Virus record (IMG/VR): IMGVR_UViG_3300023192_000859
Span: 1 to 6,015 of that record
Strand: one strand, 5' to 3'
DNA: 6,015 nt
This document shows positions 708 through 5,434 of the stretch, in pieces. The notes beneath the pieces were generated by a model. That model had not been told where the DNA came from, searched no databases, and saw only the letters and a program-made list of their open reading frames with translations. The number at the start of each line of letters is the position of its first letter. Within the stretch, counting starts at the first letter, position 1. A program made the translations under genes and the position numbers.

Positions 708-1532
708 TTAAGGACTCTCCCCTTTAGATTCAAACAAGAGATTCCGTAAAGCTTCATGCCTACGATTTTCTCTACGGACTTTCGCCTCATGATAATTATC
801 ACTATCGTCATACAAGAACTGTAGTTCTTGATGGTCAAAGAATTCATACAACCTTTCTGGGTGGGTACTAAACCCCATCCAGGTCATAATGTCTATACCG
901 AATCCAAGTTGGGTAGCAGTAATTCTAGATGTTAACCCTAACAAATGCCCGGTGTCTCCATGAAACAAACCTCCACCAGAGTTCCCGAATATGCTAGGAG
1001 CATTCTGCATCAGGTATGATTTCTGGTCAATGATTTCACGAAGATATGTTAGGTTACCTGGACTTGGGAAAGGGTCATGAAGTAAAGAACATCCACAAAC
1101 CCATACAGGATCAGTTACTTGTAGTTCTTTTATCTCTTCCTTAGGGATAATACTAGCTACATTCCTCATAGGTCTAGTATTGTTTAATTGCACCGCAGCT
1201 ATATCATGATGCTTATCATAAGCAATGATTTGTGCTGTAGTAGAATTAGCGGAGACTACTTTGCTCCTATCGTAATCAAAGACTTCAATACGAACTTCCT
1301 CTAGTACATCAGTCTTTACATCTTTCTTTAAGACGTTATCCCATTGTTCGGAAACTTTAATTGCTCCATCAATAACATGTTGACAAGTTAAAGCAATATT
1401 AATAAAATCACCTGGTTTATCAGGGTCTTCTTCACTATAAACTAAGACCCCACTTCCCCCTGCATTTCCTGCCAAGACTTTAGTAACGGGATACAAAACT
1501 TTCTCATGAATTTCTATCTGTGATAAACTCAT
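708..1532 (-). CDS. Trypsin-like (S1, HtrA/Trypsin_2-type) serine protease, no signal peptide or PDZ domain evident
   Basis: Motifs GSGVLV, LTCQH (His52), HDIAAVQL (Asp110), GNSGGGLF (Ser185) and LLGL. Strong RBS AGGAGG at 1540-1545. Confidence 0.93.
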   Translation of the reverse strand: MSLSQIEIHEKVLYPVTKVLAGNAGGSGVLVYSEEDPDKPGDFINIALTCQHVIDGAIKVSEQWDNVLKKDVKTDVLEEVRIEVFDYDRSKVVSANSTTAQIIAYDKHHDIAAVQLNNTRPMRNVASIIPKEEIKELQVTDPVWVCGCSLLHDPFPSPGNLTYLREIIDQKSYLMQNAPSIFGNSGGGLFHGDTGHLLGLTSRITATQLGFGIDIMTWMGFSTHPERLYEFFDHQELQFLYDDSDNYHEAKVRRENRRHEALRNLLFESKGESP

Positions 1533-2230: not shown

Positions 2231-2698
2231 TTAAATTACAATAAATCCTGACTCACATTTATATAATCCCTTTCCCATTTGCTTAGTGACAATCATATCA
2301 TTTTGTGGTTCAAATAATTCGGCTGTGCCATCAGCGAAGACCACACAATTATAAGCGTGGCTCCCCGAATAGTCAACCACCAATCCCACATTGTTTAAAT
2401 GAAATCGCCTATCCATCCTAGCTTTAAAGCTAAAGGCAAAATTATCACAATCATATTTTTCTTTTACGAAACGTTTCTTGTCTGTCCAATCCCACCTGAT
2501 TATAGCATCGAAGTCAAGGCGAGTGCAAGTCCAATACTTATTGTCTAGAACTTTTCTCTTCATTCCCACATTCATTATCTTAGCATTAATTAATTGTTGT
2601 GCTATCCATACTGTATCATGTTCTACTAAAGGTTCTGATAATTCAGGTGGGGTAATTAACTTCTTTATAGCTAAAACTTTATTAGTTATTATTCCCAT
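2231..2698 (-). CDS. Papain/transglutaminase-like cysteine peptidase (resembles the MOA agglutinin C-terminal domain type)
   Basis: YDCDNFA (Cys84), SHAYN (His114) and LFEPQND (Glu130), with upstream DxxY motif (LDNKY). Overlaps the upstream gene by 10 nt. Confidence 0.8.
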   Translation of the reverse strand: MGIITNKVLAIKKLITPPELSEPLVEHDTVWIAQQLINAKIMNVGMKRKVLDNKYWTCTRLDFDAIIRWDWTDKKRFVKEKYDCDNFAFSFKARMDRRFHLNNVGLVVDYSGSHAYNCVVFADGTAELFEPQNDMIVTKQMGKGLYKCESGFIVI

Positions 2699-2886
2699 TT
2701 TTTAATAGCTTCTTCTAAATCATCTAGTATCTGCATAGCATCTTCCTGGTCTTTCTCTAAGACAGCAACTTTAGCCTTTAAGGTTACAATTTCTTGGACA
2801 TCAGAATATTGTTTAGTGTGGGTAGCTTCCATCTTAAGGAAGATGGTTTTAAGCCGCATGATTAAATCTAGTAAACGTTCAAGCAT
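2689..2886 (-). CDS. Coiled-coil hypothetical protein, 65 aa (start revised to ATG 2886, MLERLLDL...)
   Basis: GGGGGTGGG upstream of ATG 2886 and an 8-nt overlap with the upstream gene. Heptads IVTLKAKVAVLEKDQEDAMQILDDLEEAIKKW. Confidence 0.75.
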   Translation of the reverse strand: MLERLLDLIMRLKTIFLKMEATHTKQYSDVQEIVTLKAKVAVLEKDQEDAMQILDDLEEAIKKWE

Positions 2887-3199
2887 TTTTATTCCCACCC
2901 CCTGTTTTTTCAATTGCATGGTCTTTCAAGTCTTTAATGAGAGTAGTAAGAGCTTTATCTAAACTCCTTTTAGTAGTAGTTAGTTTGTCTGCTAGATCTA
3001 GATCTTCTTCAGCACTTAGCTTACGATCTCTAAGAGCATCTACAACTGCTATAACAATCATTCCCGTATCTCTTCCTGCATCCATAACATGAGTAACCGT
3101 TTCTTTGTATCTAGTCAAATTTTTCTTTACTATAAAAAACCCTAGTACATCCATCCCTACAAAAATAATCTTATTTAGTAGAGTTCTATTAACTACCAT
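2879..3199 (-). CDS. Helical hypothetical protein, 106 aa, moderately hydrophobic N-terminus (start revised to ATG 3199)
   Basis: AAGGAAGGAAG directly upstream of ATG 3199. Segment IIFVGMDVLGFFIV and motif VDALRDRKLSAEE, of the A-x2-D-x-K-I/L-T/S-x-E-E type often seen in small phage membrane-associated proteins. Confidence 0.75.
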   Translation of the reverse strand: MVVNRTLLNKIIFVGMDVLGFFIVKKNLTRYKETVTHVMDAGRDTGMIVIAVVDALRDRKLSAEEDLDLADKLTTTKRSLDKALTTLIKDLKDHAIEKTGGGNKNA

Positions 3200-3392
3200 C
3201 ACTTCCTTCCTTACAACTACAGTTACTGCCCCCACAAGAACACATATCTACAGACCACATATCAATCTTATTAGGACAATCACAGATGTCACATTCACAC
3301 TCACACCCTATTTCACACTCACATAAACCCTTTAATGAATACATATTATTTTCACAATCACAATCCGCAGGTACATCAAAATCAGTTGCCAT
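3189..3392 (-). CDS. Acidic Cys-rich metallothionein-like protein, 67 aa
   Basis: 13 Cys, all in CxC or CxCxC motifs, 15 Asp/Glu, no His. RBS AAGGAGTGGAG before ATG 3392. Confidence 0.75.
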   Translation of the reverse strand: MATDFDVPADCDCENNMYSLKGLCECEIGCECECDICDCPNKIDMWSVDMCSCGGSNCSCKEGSDGS

Positions 3393-3409
3393 TTCTCCAC
3401 TCCTTATTA

Positions 3410-3541
3410 TTACCTAAACTTTCCACCAGTATGAACAGTCTTACCTTGTTTATGGCATGGGCCACACATTGTTCCCGCTTTAGTAGTCTTAGCGTGTTGC
3501 TTTCTCTTACAACCAGGACATCTTACCCAACTCTTTTTCAT
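3410..3541 (-). CDS. Basic zinc-ribbon microprotein, 43 aa (MKKSWVRCPGCKRKQHAKTTKAGTMCGPCHKQGKTVHTGGKFR)
   Basis: Hand translated. CPGC-x14-CGPC, ATGA overlap with the upstream gene, GGAG upstream, ends in TAA TAA TAA. Confidence 0.75.
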   Translation of the reverse strand: MKKSWVRCPGCKRKQHAKTTKAGTMCGPCHKQGKTVHTGGKFR

Positions 3542-3690
3542 TTATCAGACTCCAAAACTTTCATTCCCAATGCCCCTAATAAAGTAATACACCCCGTAGT
3601 AATTTCAATATGCCCTAAATCTAAGGAGACTATTGCGATAACTCCTAAAATAATGATACATATCAAAATTTGGGGGCGTAAATTTTTCAT
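3538..3690 (-). CDS. Small two-helix membrane protein, 50 aa, holin-like topology (MKNLRPQILICIIILGVIAIVSLDLGHIEITTGCITLLGALGMKVLESDK)
   Basis: Hand translated. Two hydrophobic segments, basic N-terminus, charged C-terminus. Starts 3 nt after the upstream stop and its stop overlaps the next ATG. Confidence 0.75.
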   Translation of the reverse strand: MKNLRPQILICIIILGVIAIVSLDLGHIEITTGCITLLGALGMKVLESDK

Positions 3691-3693
3691 CCT

Positions 3694-3876
3694 CTAACCT
3701 ACGATATATAAATTATAATCGAACTTGTCATCTACGGATGGGGGTGGACAGCCATTGTTTGTCACATATGTATAATATGCCATAGAATAATGTTTGTGTT
3801 GTATTTTGCTTACTATACGAGCTAGTGCAATAAAAGTTCCCGCAACACCGATACCAAAACATATACTACCTATCAT
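3694..3876 (-). CDS. Small protein with N-terminal transmembrane anchor, 60 aa
   Basis: Hydrophobic residues 2-22 followed by basic residues. First ORF after the promoter. AGAAGGAGG at 3892-3900, with a long 15-nt spacing to the ATG. Confidence 0.6.
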   Translation of the reverse strand: MIGSICFGIGVAGTFIALARIVSKIQHKHYSMAYYTYVTNNGCPPPSVDDKFDYNLYIVG

Positions 3877-3918: not shown

Positions 3919-3946
3919 ATTATACACCAATTTAGAAGAAAGTCAA
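3919..3946 (-). promoter_or_regulatory. Sigma70-type promoter (TTGACT-16 nt-TATAAT)
   Basis: -35 at 3941-3946, perfect -10 at 3919-3924, AT-rich upstream, in the intergenic gap after the protease stop. Confidence 0.72.
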
Positions 3947-3967
3947 GCTTAATATTCTATATTGTGA

Positions 3968-5434
3968 TTATAGGTGACCCTTATTATTCTCTAACCAATT
4001 GGAAAAAGATTTCCGTATTGGAAAAGCCACCTTTATTTCCGTAGAAAACCAAGGGTGCATATTAGTTTGCAAATCCTTATGTGCCTTAGCAGCTAGAGAA
4101 GTATCGTAAGTGGGAGCATCAGCATCTAATTTAGTTCCCAGATGTGACCCAGCTTCGTTAACAGTCCAAGGAGGTTTCATATGAACAGGAATTCCAAAGT
4201 CATCTGTTTCTGTTTCTATTACTGGAGTGTACCGCATAGCCTCAGGGGGTTGTTCAGAAGGAAATCCATACTCCCGTAGTAATTGATGATGTTCTGCTTG
4301 CCTTCCCGCAGTATTAAATAAAGTTGCAAAGGTACCAGCCATGTCTTTTTTCGATGACGGTTTAACTTGTTTAGCCATCCATTCCAAGAAAGAGCCTGTA
4401 AAATCAATTGACCCATCTGCTTTTTCCATTAACATAGTAAACTCCCTTCCTTCATCAATAGTTGGTGATTCATCTACAGGAGAAAAAAGTTTGCAATACA
4501 TATGTTCTGCAATCATTCCTTCTACTATATCACAAGTTTGGTCTGCTTTATTAAAAAATTTACATGTCCCACACATGATTCCATTTCGTTTCTCTACATC
4601 AGTGGCATCCCGATATCCTGAATCTACTTGAGTAACCTTTCCTTCTTCCTTGGACAAAAGGCAACTACCGTCAATACAAGTAGAGACGGCACCATTAGCT
4701 TTCAGTATCTCAAACCCAGCACTTTGATTTACACCCTTCTCACAAACTGTAACTTCTGCCAGTTCCATTTCGTCTACTTGCATATAAGGTTGTAAACCTT
4801 TCTGCATATTCTGTACTTTGGTTGCACTTCCCGCAATGGAATAACTCTTTAGCTTTCCTTCATTAACTTGATCCATAACTCGTTGGGCAATTTTTGTATC
4901 ATCCCGCAATTCTGTAATGAAGAAGAGTCCATTCTCACCTACCCCAGATTTAAAAATCTGTCCACCTTTAGAAATATATGCGGGTAATGCCCAACCTACT
5001 TGAACATCTGAATGTAATACCATTGTATTCCTGGTACGGAAGTTATTCATATACTTTTCAAAAGCTTTCTCTAGAGCTTGTGTAGTAATTAAATGGCCTT
5101 CCCTATCAATTAATTCTACAGATGCGGGGCCACCTAACACCATAGCATCGCCTTCACTCAATTTAGACATAGCTTTAGTATATGTAACATCATCTGGATA
5201 TGCTCTAGATAGAGTAATAATCTCTGCTTTAGATGCTATTCCCGCTTTAAATAAACGCTTATATTCATCAAGAGCATCTGAAATATCTTCTAAAGAAACC
5301 TTACCACTATCTTGTTTTTCAATAGGGAGGATGGTTGCATCAACATTTACAGTTTGATACATCTGAGTATTGTAGGCCCAGTTAGATGGACTAGGTATTT
5401 CTCCTACAGCAGTTTGAATTGTCTCCGTAACCAT
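3968..5434 (-). CDS. Phage prohead (capsid maturation) serine protease, HK97/XkdF-like, with internal HiPIP-like module and long N- and C-terminal extensions, 488 aa
   Basis: Residues ~98-246 carry VLGGPASVELIDREGHLI, MVLH (His141) SDVQVG, GKLKSYSIAG (Ser199) and ELAEVTVCEKGVN (Glu227). TAATG overlap with the upstream gene. Confidence 0.88.
   Translation of the reverse strand: MVTETIQTAVGEIPSPSNWAYNTQMYQTVNVDATILPIEKQDSGKVSLEDISDALDEYKRLFKAGIASKAEIITLSRAYPDDVTYTKAMSKLSEGDAMVLGGPASVELIDREGHLITTQALEKAFEKYMNNFRTRNTMVLHSDVQVGWALPAYISKGGQIFKSGVGENGLFFITELRDDTKIAQRVMDQVNEGKLKSYSIAGSATKVQNMQKGLQPYMQVDEMELAEVTVCEKGVNQSAGFEILKANGAVSTCIDGSCLLSKEEGKVTQVDSGYRDATDVEKRNGIMCGTCKFFNKADQTCDIVEGMIAEHMYCKLFSPVDESPTIDEGREFTMLMEKADGSIDFTGSFLEWMAKQVKPSSKKDMAGTFATLFNTAGRQAEHHQLLREYGFPSEQPPEAMRYTPVIETETDDFGIPVHMKPPWTVNEAGSHLGTKLDADAPTYDTSLAAKAHKDLQTNMHPWFSTEIKVAFPIRKSFSNWLENNKGHL
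4478..4639 (-). other. HiPIP-like [4Fe-4S] domain within the prohead protease (residues ~266-319)
   Basis: KVTQVDSGYRD...CGTCKFF...TCDIVEGMIAEHMYCKLFSP gives Tyr274 plus C288-x2-C291-x9-C301-x12-C314, with the aromatic and V-x-G-x-I positions typical of small HiPIPs. Confidence 0.72.

What the first reader, a model, noticed from the sequence alone, without database searches (positions are those of the whole stretch)
3189..3392. Phage-encoded acidic metallothionein-like protein
Seen: 67 aa, 13 Cys (19%) as CDC, CEC, CECEC, CDC, CSC, CSC, with 15 acidic residues, 3 Lys, no His and a strong RBS. Known: CxC arrays typify metallothioneins, while bacterial SmtA/BmtA types use His ligands as well. 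Inference: a distinct viral metal-buffering or metal-donor protein, possibly serving the adjacent zinc ribbon or the Fe-S module.
Basis: partly seen in the sequence, partly recalled or inferred. Interest (0 to 1): 0.62.

Follow-up and report, generated by a model that had tools for sequence, protein, structure and literature searches.

The report
Phage-only metallothionein-like cysteine cluster protein
A widespread group of uncultured marine phages carries a tiny, very acidic protein whose 13 cysteines never change and are spaced like those of metallothionein, so it is probably a metal-cluster protein of a new, virus-only family, though no metal binding has been measured.

Summary
The ORF is real. 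It lies on the minus strand at 3189..3392 and encodes 67 aa with 13 Cys (19.4%, against 1.8% in the neighbouring genes), 15 acidic residues, 3 Lys and no His. It has an AAGGAG ribosome-binding site.

It is a conserved gene. Syntenic homologues in diverged phage contigs keep all 13 Cys, with dN/dS 0.07-0.6 and saturated synonymous sites. The family has about 32 clusters. All are marine metagenomic and unnamed, and none was found in 185,579 prokaryote genomes or in cultured phages.

The protein has two modules. A rigid 9-Cys core (CxC-x10-CxC-x3-CxCxC-x2-CxC) is joined by a variable linker to a CxC-x2-4-CxC module. More distant phages of the lineage carry, at the same position, a homologue (hhalign 96.9%) with other loops but again 9+4 Cys. 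That core lines up Cys for Cys with the mammalian metallothionein beta-domain, though not significantly. Metallothionein families are the only recurrent Pfam matches, and all are below threshold. AlphaFold2 predicts no fold.

The gene follows a conserved sigma-70 promoter and a conserved 50-aa membrane protein. The zinc-ribbon neighbour is often absent.

Verdict: a metallothionein-like metal-thiolate protein of a new phage-restricted family. Its role (metal sink or donor, or metal-scaffolded acidic effector) is open. Metal binding and expression are untested.

The parts
3189..3392 (-). Gene for the 67-aa acidic 13-Cys protein (P0001), stop codon included
   Evidence: Exact copies lie on 4 contigs. 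Syntenic homologues carry 13 invariant Cys. dN/dS is 0.07-0.6.
3276..3362 (-). 9-Cys core, residues 11-39: CxC-x10-CxC-x3-CxCxC-x2-CxC, including the conserved N..L.G loop
   Evidence: Cys spacing is 1-10-1-3-1-1-2-1 in nearly all members. The core occurs alone in P0047 and P0049, and at the C-terminus of P0048. It is homologous to the [CxC]4-C core of the sister clade.
3243..3275 (-). Linker, residues 40-50, of variable length (11-21 aa across the family), with near-invariant Trp46 and Asp49
3213..3242 (-). C-terminal 4-Cys module, residues 51-60 (CSCGGSNCSC; family form C.CGGNC.C)
   Evidence: Spacing is 1-(2 to 4)-1. The module is duplicated in P0046/P0053/P0054 and placed N-terminally in P0048 and L152-L155. 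It is the best-conserved stretch between the two clades.
3400..3405 (-). Shine-Dalgarno AAGGAG, 7 nt upstream of the ATG
3919..3946 (-). Sigma-70-type promoter TTGACT-N16-TATAAT heading the small-gene cluster that contains the Cys-rich gene
   Evidence: It matches 11 of 12 consensus positions. It is identical in 11 of 13 diverged loci, within an otherwise variable spacer. In the 64.7-kb relative it is one of only two intergenic near-consensus promoters on the coding strand.
3694..3876 (-). 60-aa ORF with a hydrophobic N-terminus (likely membrane protein), first gene after the promoter
3538..3690 (-). Conserved 50-aa hydrophobic mini-protein (likely membrane). Across the wider lineage the Cys-rich gene sits directly after it.
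   Evidence: 40 of 44 informative loci. Start and stop coordinates coincide in several distant-clade loci.
3410..3541 (-). 43-aa zinc-ribbon protein. It is a facultative neighbour, not a constant partner.
   Evidence: Weak zinc-ribbon Pfam hits. Present upstream in 11 of 17 loci and absent in 6.
2879..3199 (-). Downstream 106-aa ORF whose ATG overlaps the end of the Cys-rich gene by 11 nt. The longer 118-aa GTG ORF is an artefact of reading the TGT-rich codons in another frame.
   Evidence: The same frame artefact appears in relatives. This gene is absent in the L013-L018 clade.

Best explanation
The gene encodes a cytoplasmic metal-thiolate cluster protein. It is a functional analogue of metallothionein that belongs to a new, phage-restricted family.

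Shown: it is a real gene under purifying selection. Its 13 Cys are invariant. It is built from a rigid 9-Cys core and one or more 4-Cys CxC-x2-4-CxC modules. It is strongly acidic, has no signal peptide or hydrophobic stretch visible in the sequence, and has no predictable fold of its own.

Inferred: the 9-Cys core wraps a three-metal M(II)3Cys9 cluster, as 9-Cys metallothionein beta-domains do, or a larger Cu(I) cluster. The 4-Cys module holds one further ion. That gives about 4 Zn/Cd per 67-aa protein.

Inferred from the conserved sigma-70 promoter: it is transcribed by the unmodified host RNA polymerase, probably early in infection, together with small membrane proteins.

Most likely role: a high-affinity cytosolic sink that captures labile Zn (or Cu/Cd) in the infected cell and holds or hands it over for phage needs. 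A related phage genome of this lineage (G001) encodes a CHC2 zinc-finger DnaG-type primase, and the window itself encodes a zinc-ribbon protein. It is not a host-derived detoxification gene.
For: Gene reality and Cys invariance:
- 13 of 13 Cys are invariant in 10 diverged loci. dN/dS is 0.07-0.6 while synonymous sites are saturated.
- Cys is enriched 11-fold over the neighbouring genes, P 1.6e-10.

Modular build:
- The core spacing is fixed, the linker varies from 11 to 21 aa, and the 4-Cys module is duplicated, moved or separated.
- The sister clade at the same genomic position has different loops but again 9+4 = 13 Cys. It is homologous by hhalign at 96.9%, E 1.7e-10. So the Cys count and the acidity are conserved, not a particular surface.

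Likeness to metallothionein:
- The three best PDB matches of the sister-clade profile are MT beta-domains (2mrt, 9q7p, 1dft), with all nine Cys in register.
- Metallothionein families are the only recurrent Pfam matches: PF02067 in 13 of 26 members, PF02068 in 9 of 26, PF12749, and PF00131 at E 9e-4.
- 9-Cys MT domains bind three divalent ions (PMC7826182).
- AlphaFold2 gives pLDDT 42-45 with two alignments, and the ESM Atlas model has pLDDT 0.28. This is what a fold that needs metal would give.

Context:
- The sigma-70 promoter is conserved.
- The gene is near-universal in the lineage: 14 of 14 close relatives and 43 of 44 informative loci.
- No cellular homologue was found.
- The relative G001 encodes a DnaG-type primase with a CHC2 zinc finger.
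Against: - No metal binding has been measured, and every likeness to metallothionein families is below significance and partly compositional.
- The residues between the cysteines are acidic rather than Lys/Ser-rich. This is unusual for metallothioneins and would add charge to already anionic clusters.
- Near-invariant non-Cys residues within the window's clade (Asn16, Leu20, Gly22, Glu25, Trp46, Asp49) hint at a defined surface.
- The gene is a near-constant member of the phage genome and is absent from hosts. That fits a phage-specific effector as well as it fits a metal buffer.
- There is no evidence of expression: RNA-library contigs do not cover it.
- Early timing is inferred from a promoter consensus only.
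Confidence: 0.45

Rival explanations
1. The metal clusters are only scaffolding. The protein is a small, highly anionic decoy or inhibitor, such as a nucleic-acid mimic or host-takeover/anti-defence factor, that binds a specific host protein.
For: - The net charge is conserved: on average 15.7 acidic against 2.4 basic residues.
- It is phage-restricted.
- It sits behind a host-type promoter among small genes of unknown function.
- It evolves much faster than the structural genes: 44-57% identity against 79-89% for the protease in the same genomes.
- The window's clade has an invariant loop and Trp.
Against: That loop is not kept in the sister clade. Only the Cys count, the acidity and the C.CGGNC.C module are conserved there. 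No fold or surface can be predicted. No match was found in PADLOC-independent libraries, and I did not run the PADLOC library itself.
Confidence: 0.25
2. It works together with the conserved 50-aa membrane mini-protein encoded just upstream. It would be the cytoplasmic metal- or redox-sensing part of a membrane module, such as a lysis-timing, superinfection-exclusion or ion-channel unit.
For: In 40 of 44 informative loci the gene directly follows the membrane gene, and in several loci the stop and start coordinates coincide. The neighbourhood is rich in small membrane and coiled-coil proteins. These give weak holin and Rz-like spanin PHROG hits (E 0.002-0.01). A papain-fold-like 155-aa protein lies nearby.
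Against: All lysis-type hits are weak. In the window's clade a zinc-ribbon gene or an OB-fold gene is often inserted between the two. In L152-L155 the order is reversed. I ran no interaction test.
Confidence: 0.12
3. It is an iron-sulfur or redox-active (thiol/disulfide) protein rather than a Zn/Cu thiolate protein.
For: Some relatives carry a 2x[4Fe-4S] ferredoxin gene directly downstream (L132-L135; Fer4_7, E 1.5e-7). The Cys density is high.
Against: There is no CxxC or CxxCxxC...CP ferredoxin-type spacing. No Fe-S family matched even at E 10. Dense CxC arrays are typical of thiolate clusters. The protein has no signal peptide, so it stays in the reducing cytoplasm.
Confidence: 0.05
4. It is a precursor peptide of a ribosomally made, post-translationally modified Cys-rich product.
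For: It is a small Cys-rich ORF, and two peptidase-like genes lie within 2.5 kb.
Against: No radical-SAM, lanthionine-synthetase or YcaO-type gene lies in the conserved neighbourhood. There is no leader/core division. The number of Cys is conserved rather than a core peptide.
Confidence: 0.03

Closest known systems
Metallothionein 9-Cys beta-domains of animals (vertebrate MT-1/MT-2 beta; mollusc beta2, [CxC]4-C)
   Same: Both have nine Cys in CxC pairs within about 25-30 residues. The sister clade's core (CxC-x5-CxC-x4-CxCxCxC-x2-C) aligns with all nine Cys of rat and mouse MT beta-domains. Both are built from Cys modules joined by linkers, as described for MTs (PMC7826182). Neither has a fold of its own.
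   Different: There is no significant sequence similarity (E 0.28-0.67; Pfam scores are below the cut-offs). The window's clade has a 10-residue structured-looking loop and a [CxC]3-C-[CxC] layout. The residues between the Cys are acidic instead of Lys/Ser. The second unit is a 4-Cys module, not an 11-12-Cys alpha-domain. The protein is encoded by phages.
CxCGxxCxC units of insect (Pfam PF02067) and plant Ec (PF02068) metallothioneins
   Same: The C-terminal C.CGGNC.C module has the same spacing. These two families are the commonest sub-threshold Pfam matches, in 13 and 9 of 26 members.
   Different: The best E-values are 0.41 and 0.028, and the one bit score listed for each family (7.7 and 11.6) is far below the 25-31.8-bit cut-offs. 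The phage protein has no His ligands, unlike Ec-type proteins (from my own knowledge).
Bacterial metallothioneins SmtA/BmtA (Pfam PF02069) and mycobacterial MymT
   Same: All are small cytosolic prokaryote-world proteins that bind Zn/Cd (SmtA/BmtA) or Cu(I) (MymT) through Cys. This rests on established knowledge; reviews are listed.
   Different: No match to PF02069 even at E 10. The phage protein has no His. No homologue was found in 185,579 prokaryote genomes.
Zn3Cys9 cluster domains of chromatin proteins (tesmin/MSL2 CXC domain, pre-SET domain)
   Same: Nine Cys hold a trinuclear zinc cluster that scaffolds a small binding domain (my own knowledge). This is the model for the 'metal as scaffold' rival.
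   Different: No Pfam match at E up to 10. The spacing differs, and those domains are basic DNA or histone binders, whereas this protein is strongly acidic.

Membership tests
Metallothionein superfamily (operational definition, PMC7826182) | Small intracellular protein (<100 aa) | tested here: met
   The protein is 67 aa and most family members are 44-99 aa. By eye the sequence has no N-terminal signal peptide or hydrophobic stretch; I ran no prediction program.
Metallothionein superfamily (operational definition, PMC7826182) | Cys content about 15-30%, arranged in CxC/CC motifs | tested here: met
   Cys content is 19.4% with 7 CxC motifs, and 27% in the 49-aa relatives.
Metallothionein superfamily (operational definition, PMC7826182) | Cys motifs grouped in domains of fixed Cys number that are conserved in evolution | tested here: met
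   The 9+4 Cys count is invariant in the window's clade and kept in the sister clade despite different spacing.
Metallothionein superfamily (operational definition, PMC7826182) | Few aromatic residues and few His | tested here: inconclusive
   There is no His, but there are 3 aromatic residues, including a near-invariant Trp.
Metallothionein superfamily (operational definition, PMC7826182) | Binds several metal ions in thiolate clusters (stoichiometry, spectroscopy) | not testable with these tools
   This needs expression followed by ICP-MS, native MS, and UV/CD or 113Cd NMR.
Curated Pfam metallothionein families (PF00131, PF02067, PF02068, PF12749, PF02069) | Score at or above the family's gathering threshold | tested here: not met
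   P0001 has no match at E up to 10. Relatives give only sub-threshold matches; the two scores listed are 7.7 and 11.6 bits against cut-offs of 25-31.8, and the best E-value is 9e-4 for PF00131 in 1 of 16 members. PF02069 is never matched.
Bacterial SmtA/BmtA type | His ligands beside Cys, and homologues in bacterial genomes | tested here: not met
   There is no His. No relative was found in genome contigs by two scans.
Iron-sulfur proteins (ferredoxin, HiPIP, rubredoxin) | CxxC-type cluster motifs and a match to an Fe-S family | tested here: not met
   No such motif, and no Fe-S family at E up to 10.
Auxiliary metabolic gene acquired from a host | Recognisable cellular homologues and patchy distribution among related phages | tested here: not met
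   No cellular homologue was found. The gene is present in 14 of 14 close relatives and 43 of 44 informative loci of the lineage.

The most novel reading that the evidence does not exclude
A whole lineage of abundant marine phages makes, from a host-type promoter and probably early in infection, its own thionein that seizes the infected cell's labile zinc (or copper). This would both stock metal for phage enzymes and mimic metal starvation in the host, for instance by derepressing uptake systems. It would be the first virus-specific metallothionein and a new form of viral control over host metal economy. A subclade may even tune the product by reading through an in-frame UGA between the 9-Cys core and the 4-Cys module.
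Probability: 0.2. Interest if true: 0.82.

Novelty: new variant of a known kind. Interest (0 to 1): 0.62.

Why it matters
Metallothioneins are known from eukaryotes and a few bacteria. In the open literature I could search, the phrases 'viral metallothionein', 'virus-encoded metallothionein' and 'phage metallothionein' occur in no paper. One 2026 preprint lists metallothioneins among candidate auxiliary genes of fumarole viruses (PMC13317609).

Here the protein is not a sporadic host-derived passenger. It is a near-constant, virus-only gene of a phage lineage. Relatives of that lineage's prohead-protease gene lie on about 300 IMG/VR contigs, and parts of this window are held by runs of 13 sequencing studies from seawater, marine sediment and hydrothermal vents.

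If it binds metal as predicted, trace-metal handling would join the list of host processes that marine phages manage themselves, in waters where zinc is scarce. It would also give metallobiology a compact natural two-module system. There are 9-Cys, 13-Cys and 17-21-Cys natural variants on which to test how Cys number sets metal stoichiometry. It is cheap to test: the protein is 49-67 aa and can be expressed in E. coli.

Tried and rejected
Searches that found nothing:
- Pfam, PHROGs and NCBIfam scans of the protein gave no family.
- Word search with the single protein found only itself. Homologues came from synteny and then from profiles.
- PDB sequence search with the family profile gave nothing at E 10.
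- tblastn against 50,697 cultured or deposited phage records gave nothing for either clade.
- Megablast of the whole window against phages gave nothing.

Structure:
- The ESM Atlas feature and structure neighbours were uninformative; its own model has pLDDT 0.28.
- Two AlphaFold2 runs, with 26 and 35 sequences, gave pLDDT 41.7 and 44.5. I therefore ran no fold search, because matches of such models are meaningless.

Cellular genomes:
- A profile-derived peptide pattern matched 4 stretches, none a relative.
- A second profile scan failed for lack of conserved columns.
- A DNA pattern for the core's Cys spacing matched 79 stretches. These were simple TG repeats, off-frame matches or unrelated Cys-rich tails, and none carried the family signature.

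Hypotheses rejected:
- Archaeal host. This was suggested because the capsid and protease are nearest to haloarchaeal tailed viruses. I rejected it because the 64.7-kb relative encodes a sigma-70 factor, DnaB, a DnaG-type primase, PolA and bacterial RecA, and the lineage has canonical sigma-70 promoters.
- Selenocysteine at the in-frame TGA of a subclade. There is no SECIS-like Rfam match and no significant hairpin, and the TGA is not at a Cys column. TGA is an ordinary stop elsewhere in these genomes, so I name no alternative code.

Expression: contigs of two RNA-type libraries lie on other parts of the window but not on this gene.

Full report
**Observation**

The ORF exists as described, but on the minus strand: window 3189..3392, 67 aa plus TAA. 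It has 13 Cys arranged as CDC, CEC, CECEC, CDC, CSC, CSC. It also has 15 acidic residues, 3 Lys, no Arg and no His. AAGGAG lies 7 nt before the ATG. Cys makes up 19.4% of the protein, against 1.76% in the other 14 ORFs of the window. The binomial P is 1.6e-10, and no other 67-residue stretch in any frame comes close. The window is a whole 6,015-bp IMG/VR contig that CheckV rates at 8% of a genome.

**It is a real, constrained gene**

The exact protein is encoded on four contigs from different samples. I followed its neighbours (the trypsin-like protease and the zinc ribbon) into related contigs. That gave diverged copies of the gene at the same position, each with exactly 13 Cys.

Ten diverged loci were compared codon by codon:
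- dN/dS is 0.07-0.6.
- Synonymous sites are near saturation.
- Every Cys codon is kept.

The plus-strand ORFs over the same DNA are frame shadows.

**How large the family is and where it lives**

| Search | Result |
|---|---|
| Profile searches of 5.8 billion proteins | 23, then 32 clusters at 90% identity |
| Profile search of 1.84 billion representatives | 10 representatives at 50% identity |
| Pfam, PHROGs, NCBIfam at their thresholds | no family |
| PDB sequences with the family profile | nothing |
| 50,697 phage records | nothing |
| One genome for each of 185,579 prokaryote species | no relative |

All members are short. None carries a name beyond 'hypothetical protein'. In the genome scan, the 79 DNA-pattern matches were TG repeats, off-frame hits or unrelated Cys-rich tails.

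Parts of the window are held by 20 runs of 13 studies, labelled seawater, marine sediment, marine and hydrothermal-vent metagenomes.

**Architecture**

The Cys spacing of the N-terminal part is fixed (1-10-1-3-1-1-2-1, nine Cys). The linker varies from 11 to 21 residues. The last four Cys form CxC-x2-4-CxC, usually C.CGGNC.C.

The units behave as modules:
- Core alone: P0047, P0049.
- Core followed by two 4-Cys units: P0046, P0053, P0054.
- Two 4-Cys units in front of the core: P0048, L152-L155.

Beyond Cys, the window's clade keeps Asn16, Leu20, Gly22, Glu25, Trp46, Asp49 and Gly54. On average the family has 15.7 acidic and 2.4 basic residues.

**A wider superfamily**

I used the prohead-protease-like neighbour as a handle. 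About 300 IMG/VR contigs encode a relative of it, and 80 were fetched.

- All 14 close relatives with enough downstream sequence carry the gene.
- In more distant relatives (protease 48-61% identical) the family HMM mostly failed. Inspection showed, directly after the conserved 50-aa membrane gene, another small acidic ORF with different loops.
- That ORF again has 13 Cys: CxC-x5-CxC-x4-CxCxCxC-x2-C, a linker, then CPCGGNCGC. Some are only 49 aa, or 27% Cys.
- In 40 of 44 informative loci such an ORF follows the membrane gene. In three more it precedes it.
- The two clades are homologous by profile-profile comparison: 96.9%, E 1.7e-10.

So the 9+4 cysteine count, the acidity and the C.CGGNC.C unit are conserved over the whole lineage. 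A particular loop or surface is not.

**Likeness to metallothionein**

Against PDB sequences, the three best matches of the sister-clade profile are the beta-domains of rat MT-2, human MT-1A (in a fusion protein) and mouse MT-1. All nine Cys are in register. The E-values are 0.28-0.67, so this is a shared pattern and not proof of homology.

In Pfam, metallothionein families are the only ones that recur among members:
- PF02067 in 13 of 26 members.
- PF02068 in 9 of 26.
- PF12749 once.
- PF00131 at E 9e-4 in 1 of 16.

All are below the curated cut-offs.

The literature defines metallothioneins as intracellular proteins of under 100 aa with 15-30% Cys in CxC/CC motifs. They are built from modules, and a 9-Cys domain holds three divalent ions. 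They are regarded as intrinsically disordered without metal and prone to arise de novo (PMC7826182). AlphaFold2 gave no fold with either alignment (pLDDT 41.7 and 44.5), and the ESM Atlas model is equally poor. That fits a fold that depends on metal.

**Genomic setting**

All genes of the window are on one strand. In transcription order they are:
- a 307-aa-type protein (cut at the window's end)
- a 488-aa prohead-protease-like protein (Peptidase_S78, E 3e-5)
- two small membrane proteins
- the zinc ribbon
- the Cys-rich gene
- a 106-aa gene overlapping it by 11 nt
- a coiled-coil protein
- a 155-aa protein with a fungal-lectin C-terminal (papain-like) domain
- a trypsin-like protease

Relatives show an SU10-type capsid gene upstream.

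A 64.7-kb relative (83% complete) encodes a sigma-70 family factor, DnaB, a DnaG-type primase with a CHC2 zinc finger, PolA, bacterial RecA and a ribonucleotide reductase. The host is therefore a bacterium. This holds even though the capsid and protease are nearest to haloarchaeal tailed viruses (25-31% identity). Terminase and polymerase are at most 28% identical to anything deposited.

Between the protease gene and the small-gene cluster lies TTGACT-N16-TATAAT. It is identical in 11 of 13 diverged loci, within an otherwise variable spacer. In the 64.7-kb genome it is one of only two intergenic near-consensus promoters on the coding strand. The other precedes the sigma-factor and replication genes. 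From this I infer transcription by unmodified host polymerase, hence probably early. This is inference only.

The zinc ribbon is missing upstream in 6 of 17 loci. In one relative an OB-fold gene precedes the Cys-rich gene and thyX follows it. In L132-L135 a ferredoxin follows it. The Cys-rich protein is 44-57% identical among genomes whose protease is 79-89% identical.

**Mechanism**

Thirteen invariant cysteines in a small cytoplasmic protein are best explained by metal-thiolate clusters. The protein has no signal peptide and no fold of its own, and the Cys number is conserved while the spacing drifts.

By analogy with 9-Cys metallothionein domains, I propose:
- The core holds M(II)3Cys9, or a Cu(I) cluster.
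- Each 4-Cys unit holds one ion.
- That gives about four Zn/Cd per protein.

I hold the multi-metal binding itself to be likely, about 0.8.

The physiological role is less certain. I favour a cytosolic sink or donor made early in infection (overall confidence 0.45). It would not be a detoxification gene taken from a host: it has no cellular relatives and is nearly universal in the lineage, whatever the habitat.

The main rival is that the metals only scaffold a very acidic decoy or inhibitor (0.25). Next is a role coupled to the adjacent membrane protein (0.12). Fe-S or redox function (0.05) and a modified-peptide precursor (0.03) are minor.

**Comparison and novelty**

The protein works, by prediction, like a metallothionein. 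It meets the operational criteria that can be checked in silico. It fails membership of every curated metallothionein family and of the bacterial SmtA/BmtA type (no His, no PF02069 match, no bacterial homologues).

I therefore rate it a new variant of a known kind. It is a phage-restricted, acidic, 9+4-Cys thionein-like family.

In the searchable literature, phrases for viral or phage metallothionein occur in no paper. One preprint lists metallothioneins among candidate auxiliary genes of fumarole viruses.

**Limits**

- No metal, RNA or protein evidence exists.
- Every likeness to metallothionein is sub-significant and partly compositional.
- Promoter timing is inferred.
- The host is unknown.

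Noticed in passing
L019:6520-6729, L121:3473-3682, L208:1003-1212 (also L209-L213); not in the window: A subclade has an in-frame TGA at codon 47, between the 9-Cys core and the 4-Cys module. The module continues intact in the same frame. Between diverged copies it differs by 3 synonymous and 0 nonsynonymous changes, so it still seems to be translated. This holds for 3 distinct sequences on 9 contigs. There is no SECIS-like element, and TGA is an ordinary stop in neighbouring genes. Possibly programmed read-through giving two isoforms.
   Followed up: partly
window 3941-3977 (minus strand), just after the protease gene stop: A roughly 27-nt AT-rich element (CTATCTATAATCATAATATATAATATT-like) directly downstream of the protease stop codon is conserved in 12 of 13 diverged loci. 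It lies upstream of the conserved sigma-70 promoter. Its function is unknown (operator, phage-sigma promoter or terminator substitute?).
   Followed up: no
window 4493-4573 (minus strand), residues 288-314 of the 488-aa protein: The prohead-protease-like protein carries a long C-terminal extension with an invariant CG.C...C...C four-Cys motif, plus three further invariant Cys upstream. It matches no Pfam family, and there is only a weak PHROG hit of unknown function.
   Followed up: partly
window 2231-2698 (minus strand): The 155-aa protein matches the C-terminal domain of fungal ricin-type lectins (PF18022, E 7e-9; PF18021). From my own knowledge these have a papain-like fold, so this may be a cysteine peptidase or amidase, an odd domain for a phage.
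   Followed up: no
window 708-1532 (minus strand): A trypsin-like serine protease (PF13365, E 5e-11) is conserved throughout the lineage, in addition to the prohead protease.
   Followed up: no
L006:3750-5087 and window 3968-5434: The capsid (SU10_MCP) and prohead protease are closest to haloarchaeal tailed viruses HVTV-1/HCTV-1/5 and a Methanofastidiosa virus (25-31% identity). The replication genes of the same lineage are bacterial in type. So the head module is shared across domains.
   Followed up: partly
L132:5192-5482 and L132:5657-6010: In some distant relatives the Cys-rich gene is followed by a 2x[4Fe-4S] ferredoxin and then a SET-domain protein. In L029 it is preceded by an OB-fold (tRNA_anti-like) gene and followed by thyX. 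The slot around the gene collects varied accessory genes.
   Followed up: partly
L155:5306-5440: A second, different CxC-rich mini-ORF (45 aa, 10 Cys, acidic) lies two genes downstream of the Cys-rich gene in one relative.
   Followed up: no
window 2879-3235 and equivalents in L020, L021, L026, L028: The runs of TGT codons read in the +1 frame give open Val-rich stretches. ORF lists and some gene callers therefore extend the downstream gene backwards over the Cys-rich gene (a 118-aa GTG ORF against the real 106-aa ORF). In distant relatives this can hide the Cys-rich gene.
   Followed up: yes
L040:3362-3409 (Acholeplasmataceae MAG); L074 and L108 (Faecousia MAGs): The DNA-pattern scan turned up unrelated cellular CxC-rich stretches. 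One runs in frame into a sequence that, by eye only, resembles the start of a peroxiredoxin or thioredoxin-fold protein. Two others are acidic CxC tails in Firmicutes. They are not relatives of this family, but may be further undescribed thionein-like modules.
   Followed up: no
window 3037-3540: In a hydrothermal-vent run, one contig joins window 3037 to 3540 with 353 other letters in between. So a related phage there carries a replaced version of the segment that holds the zinc-ribbon and Cys-rich genes.
   Followed up: no
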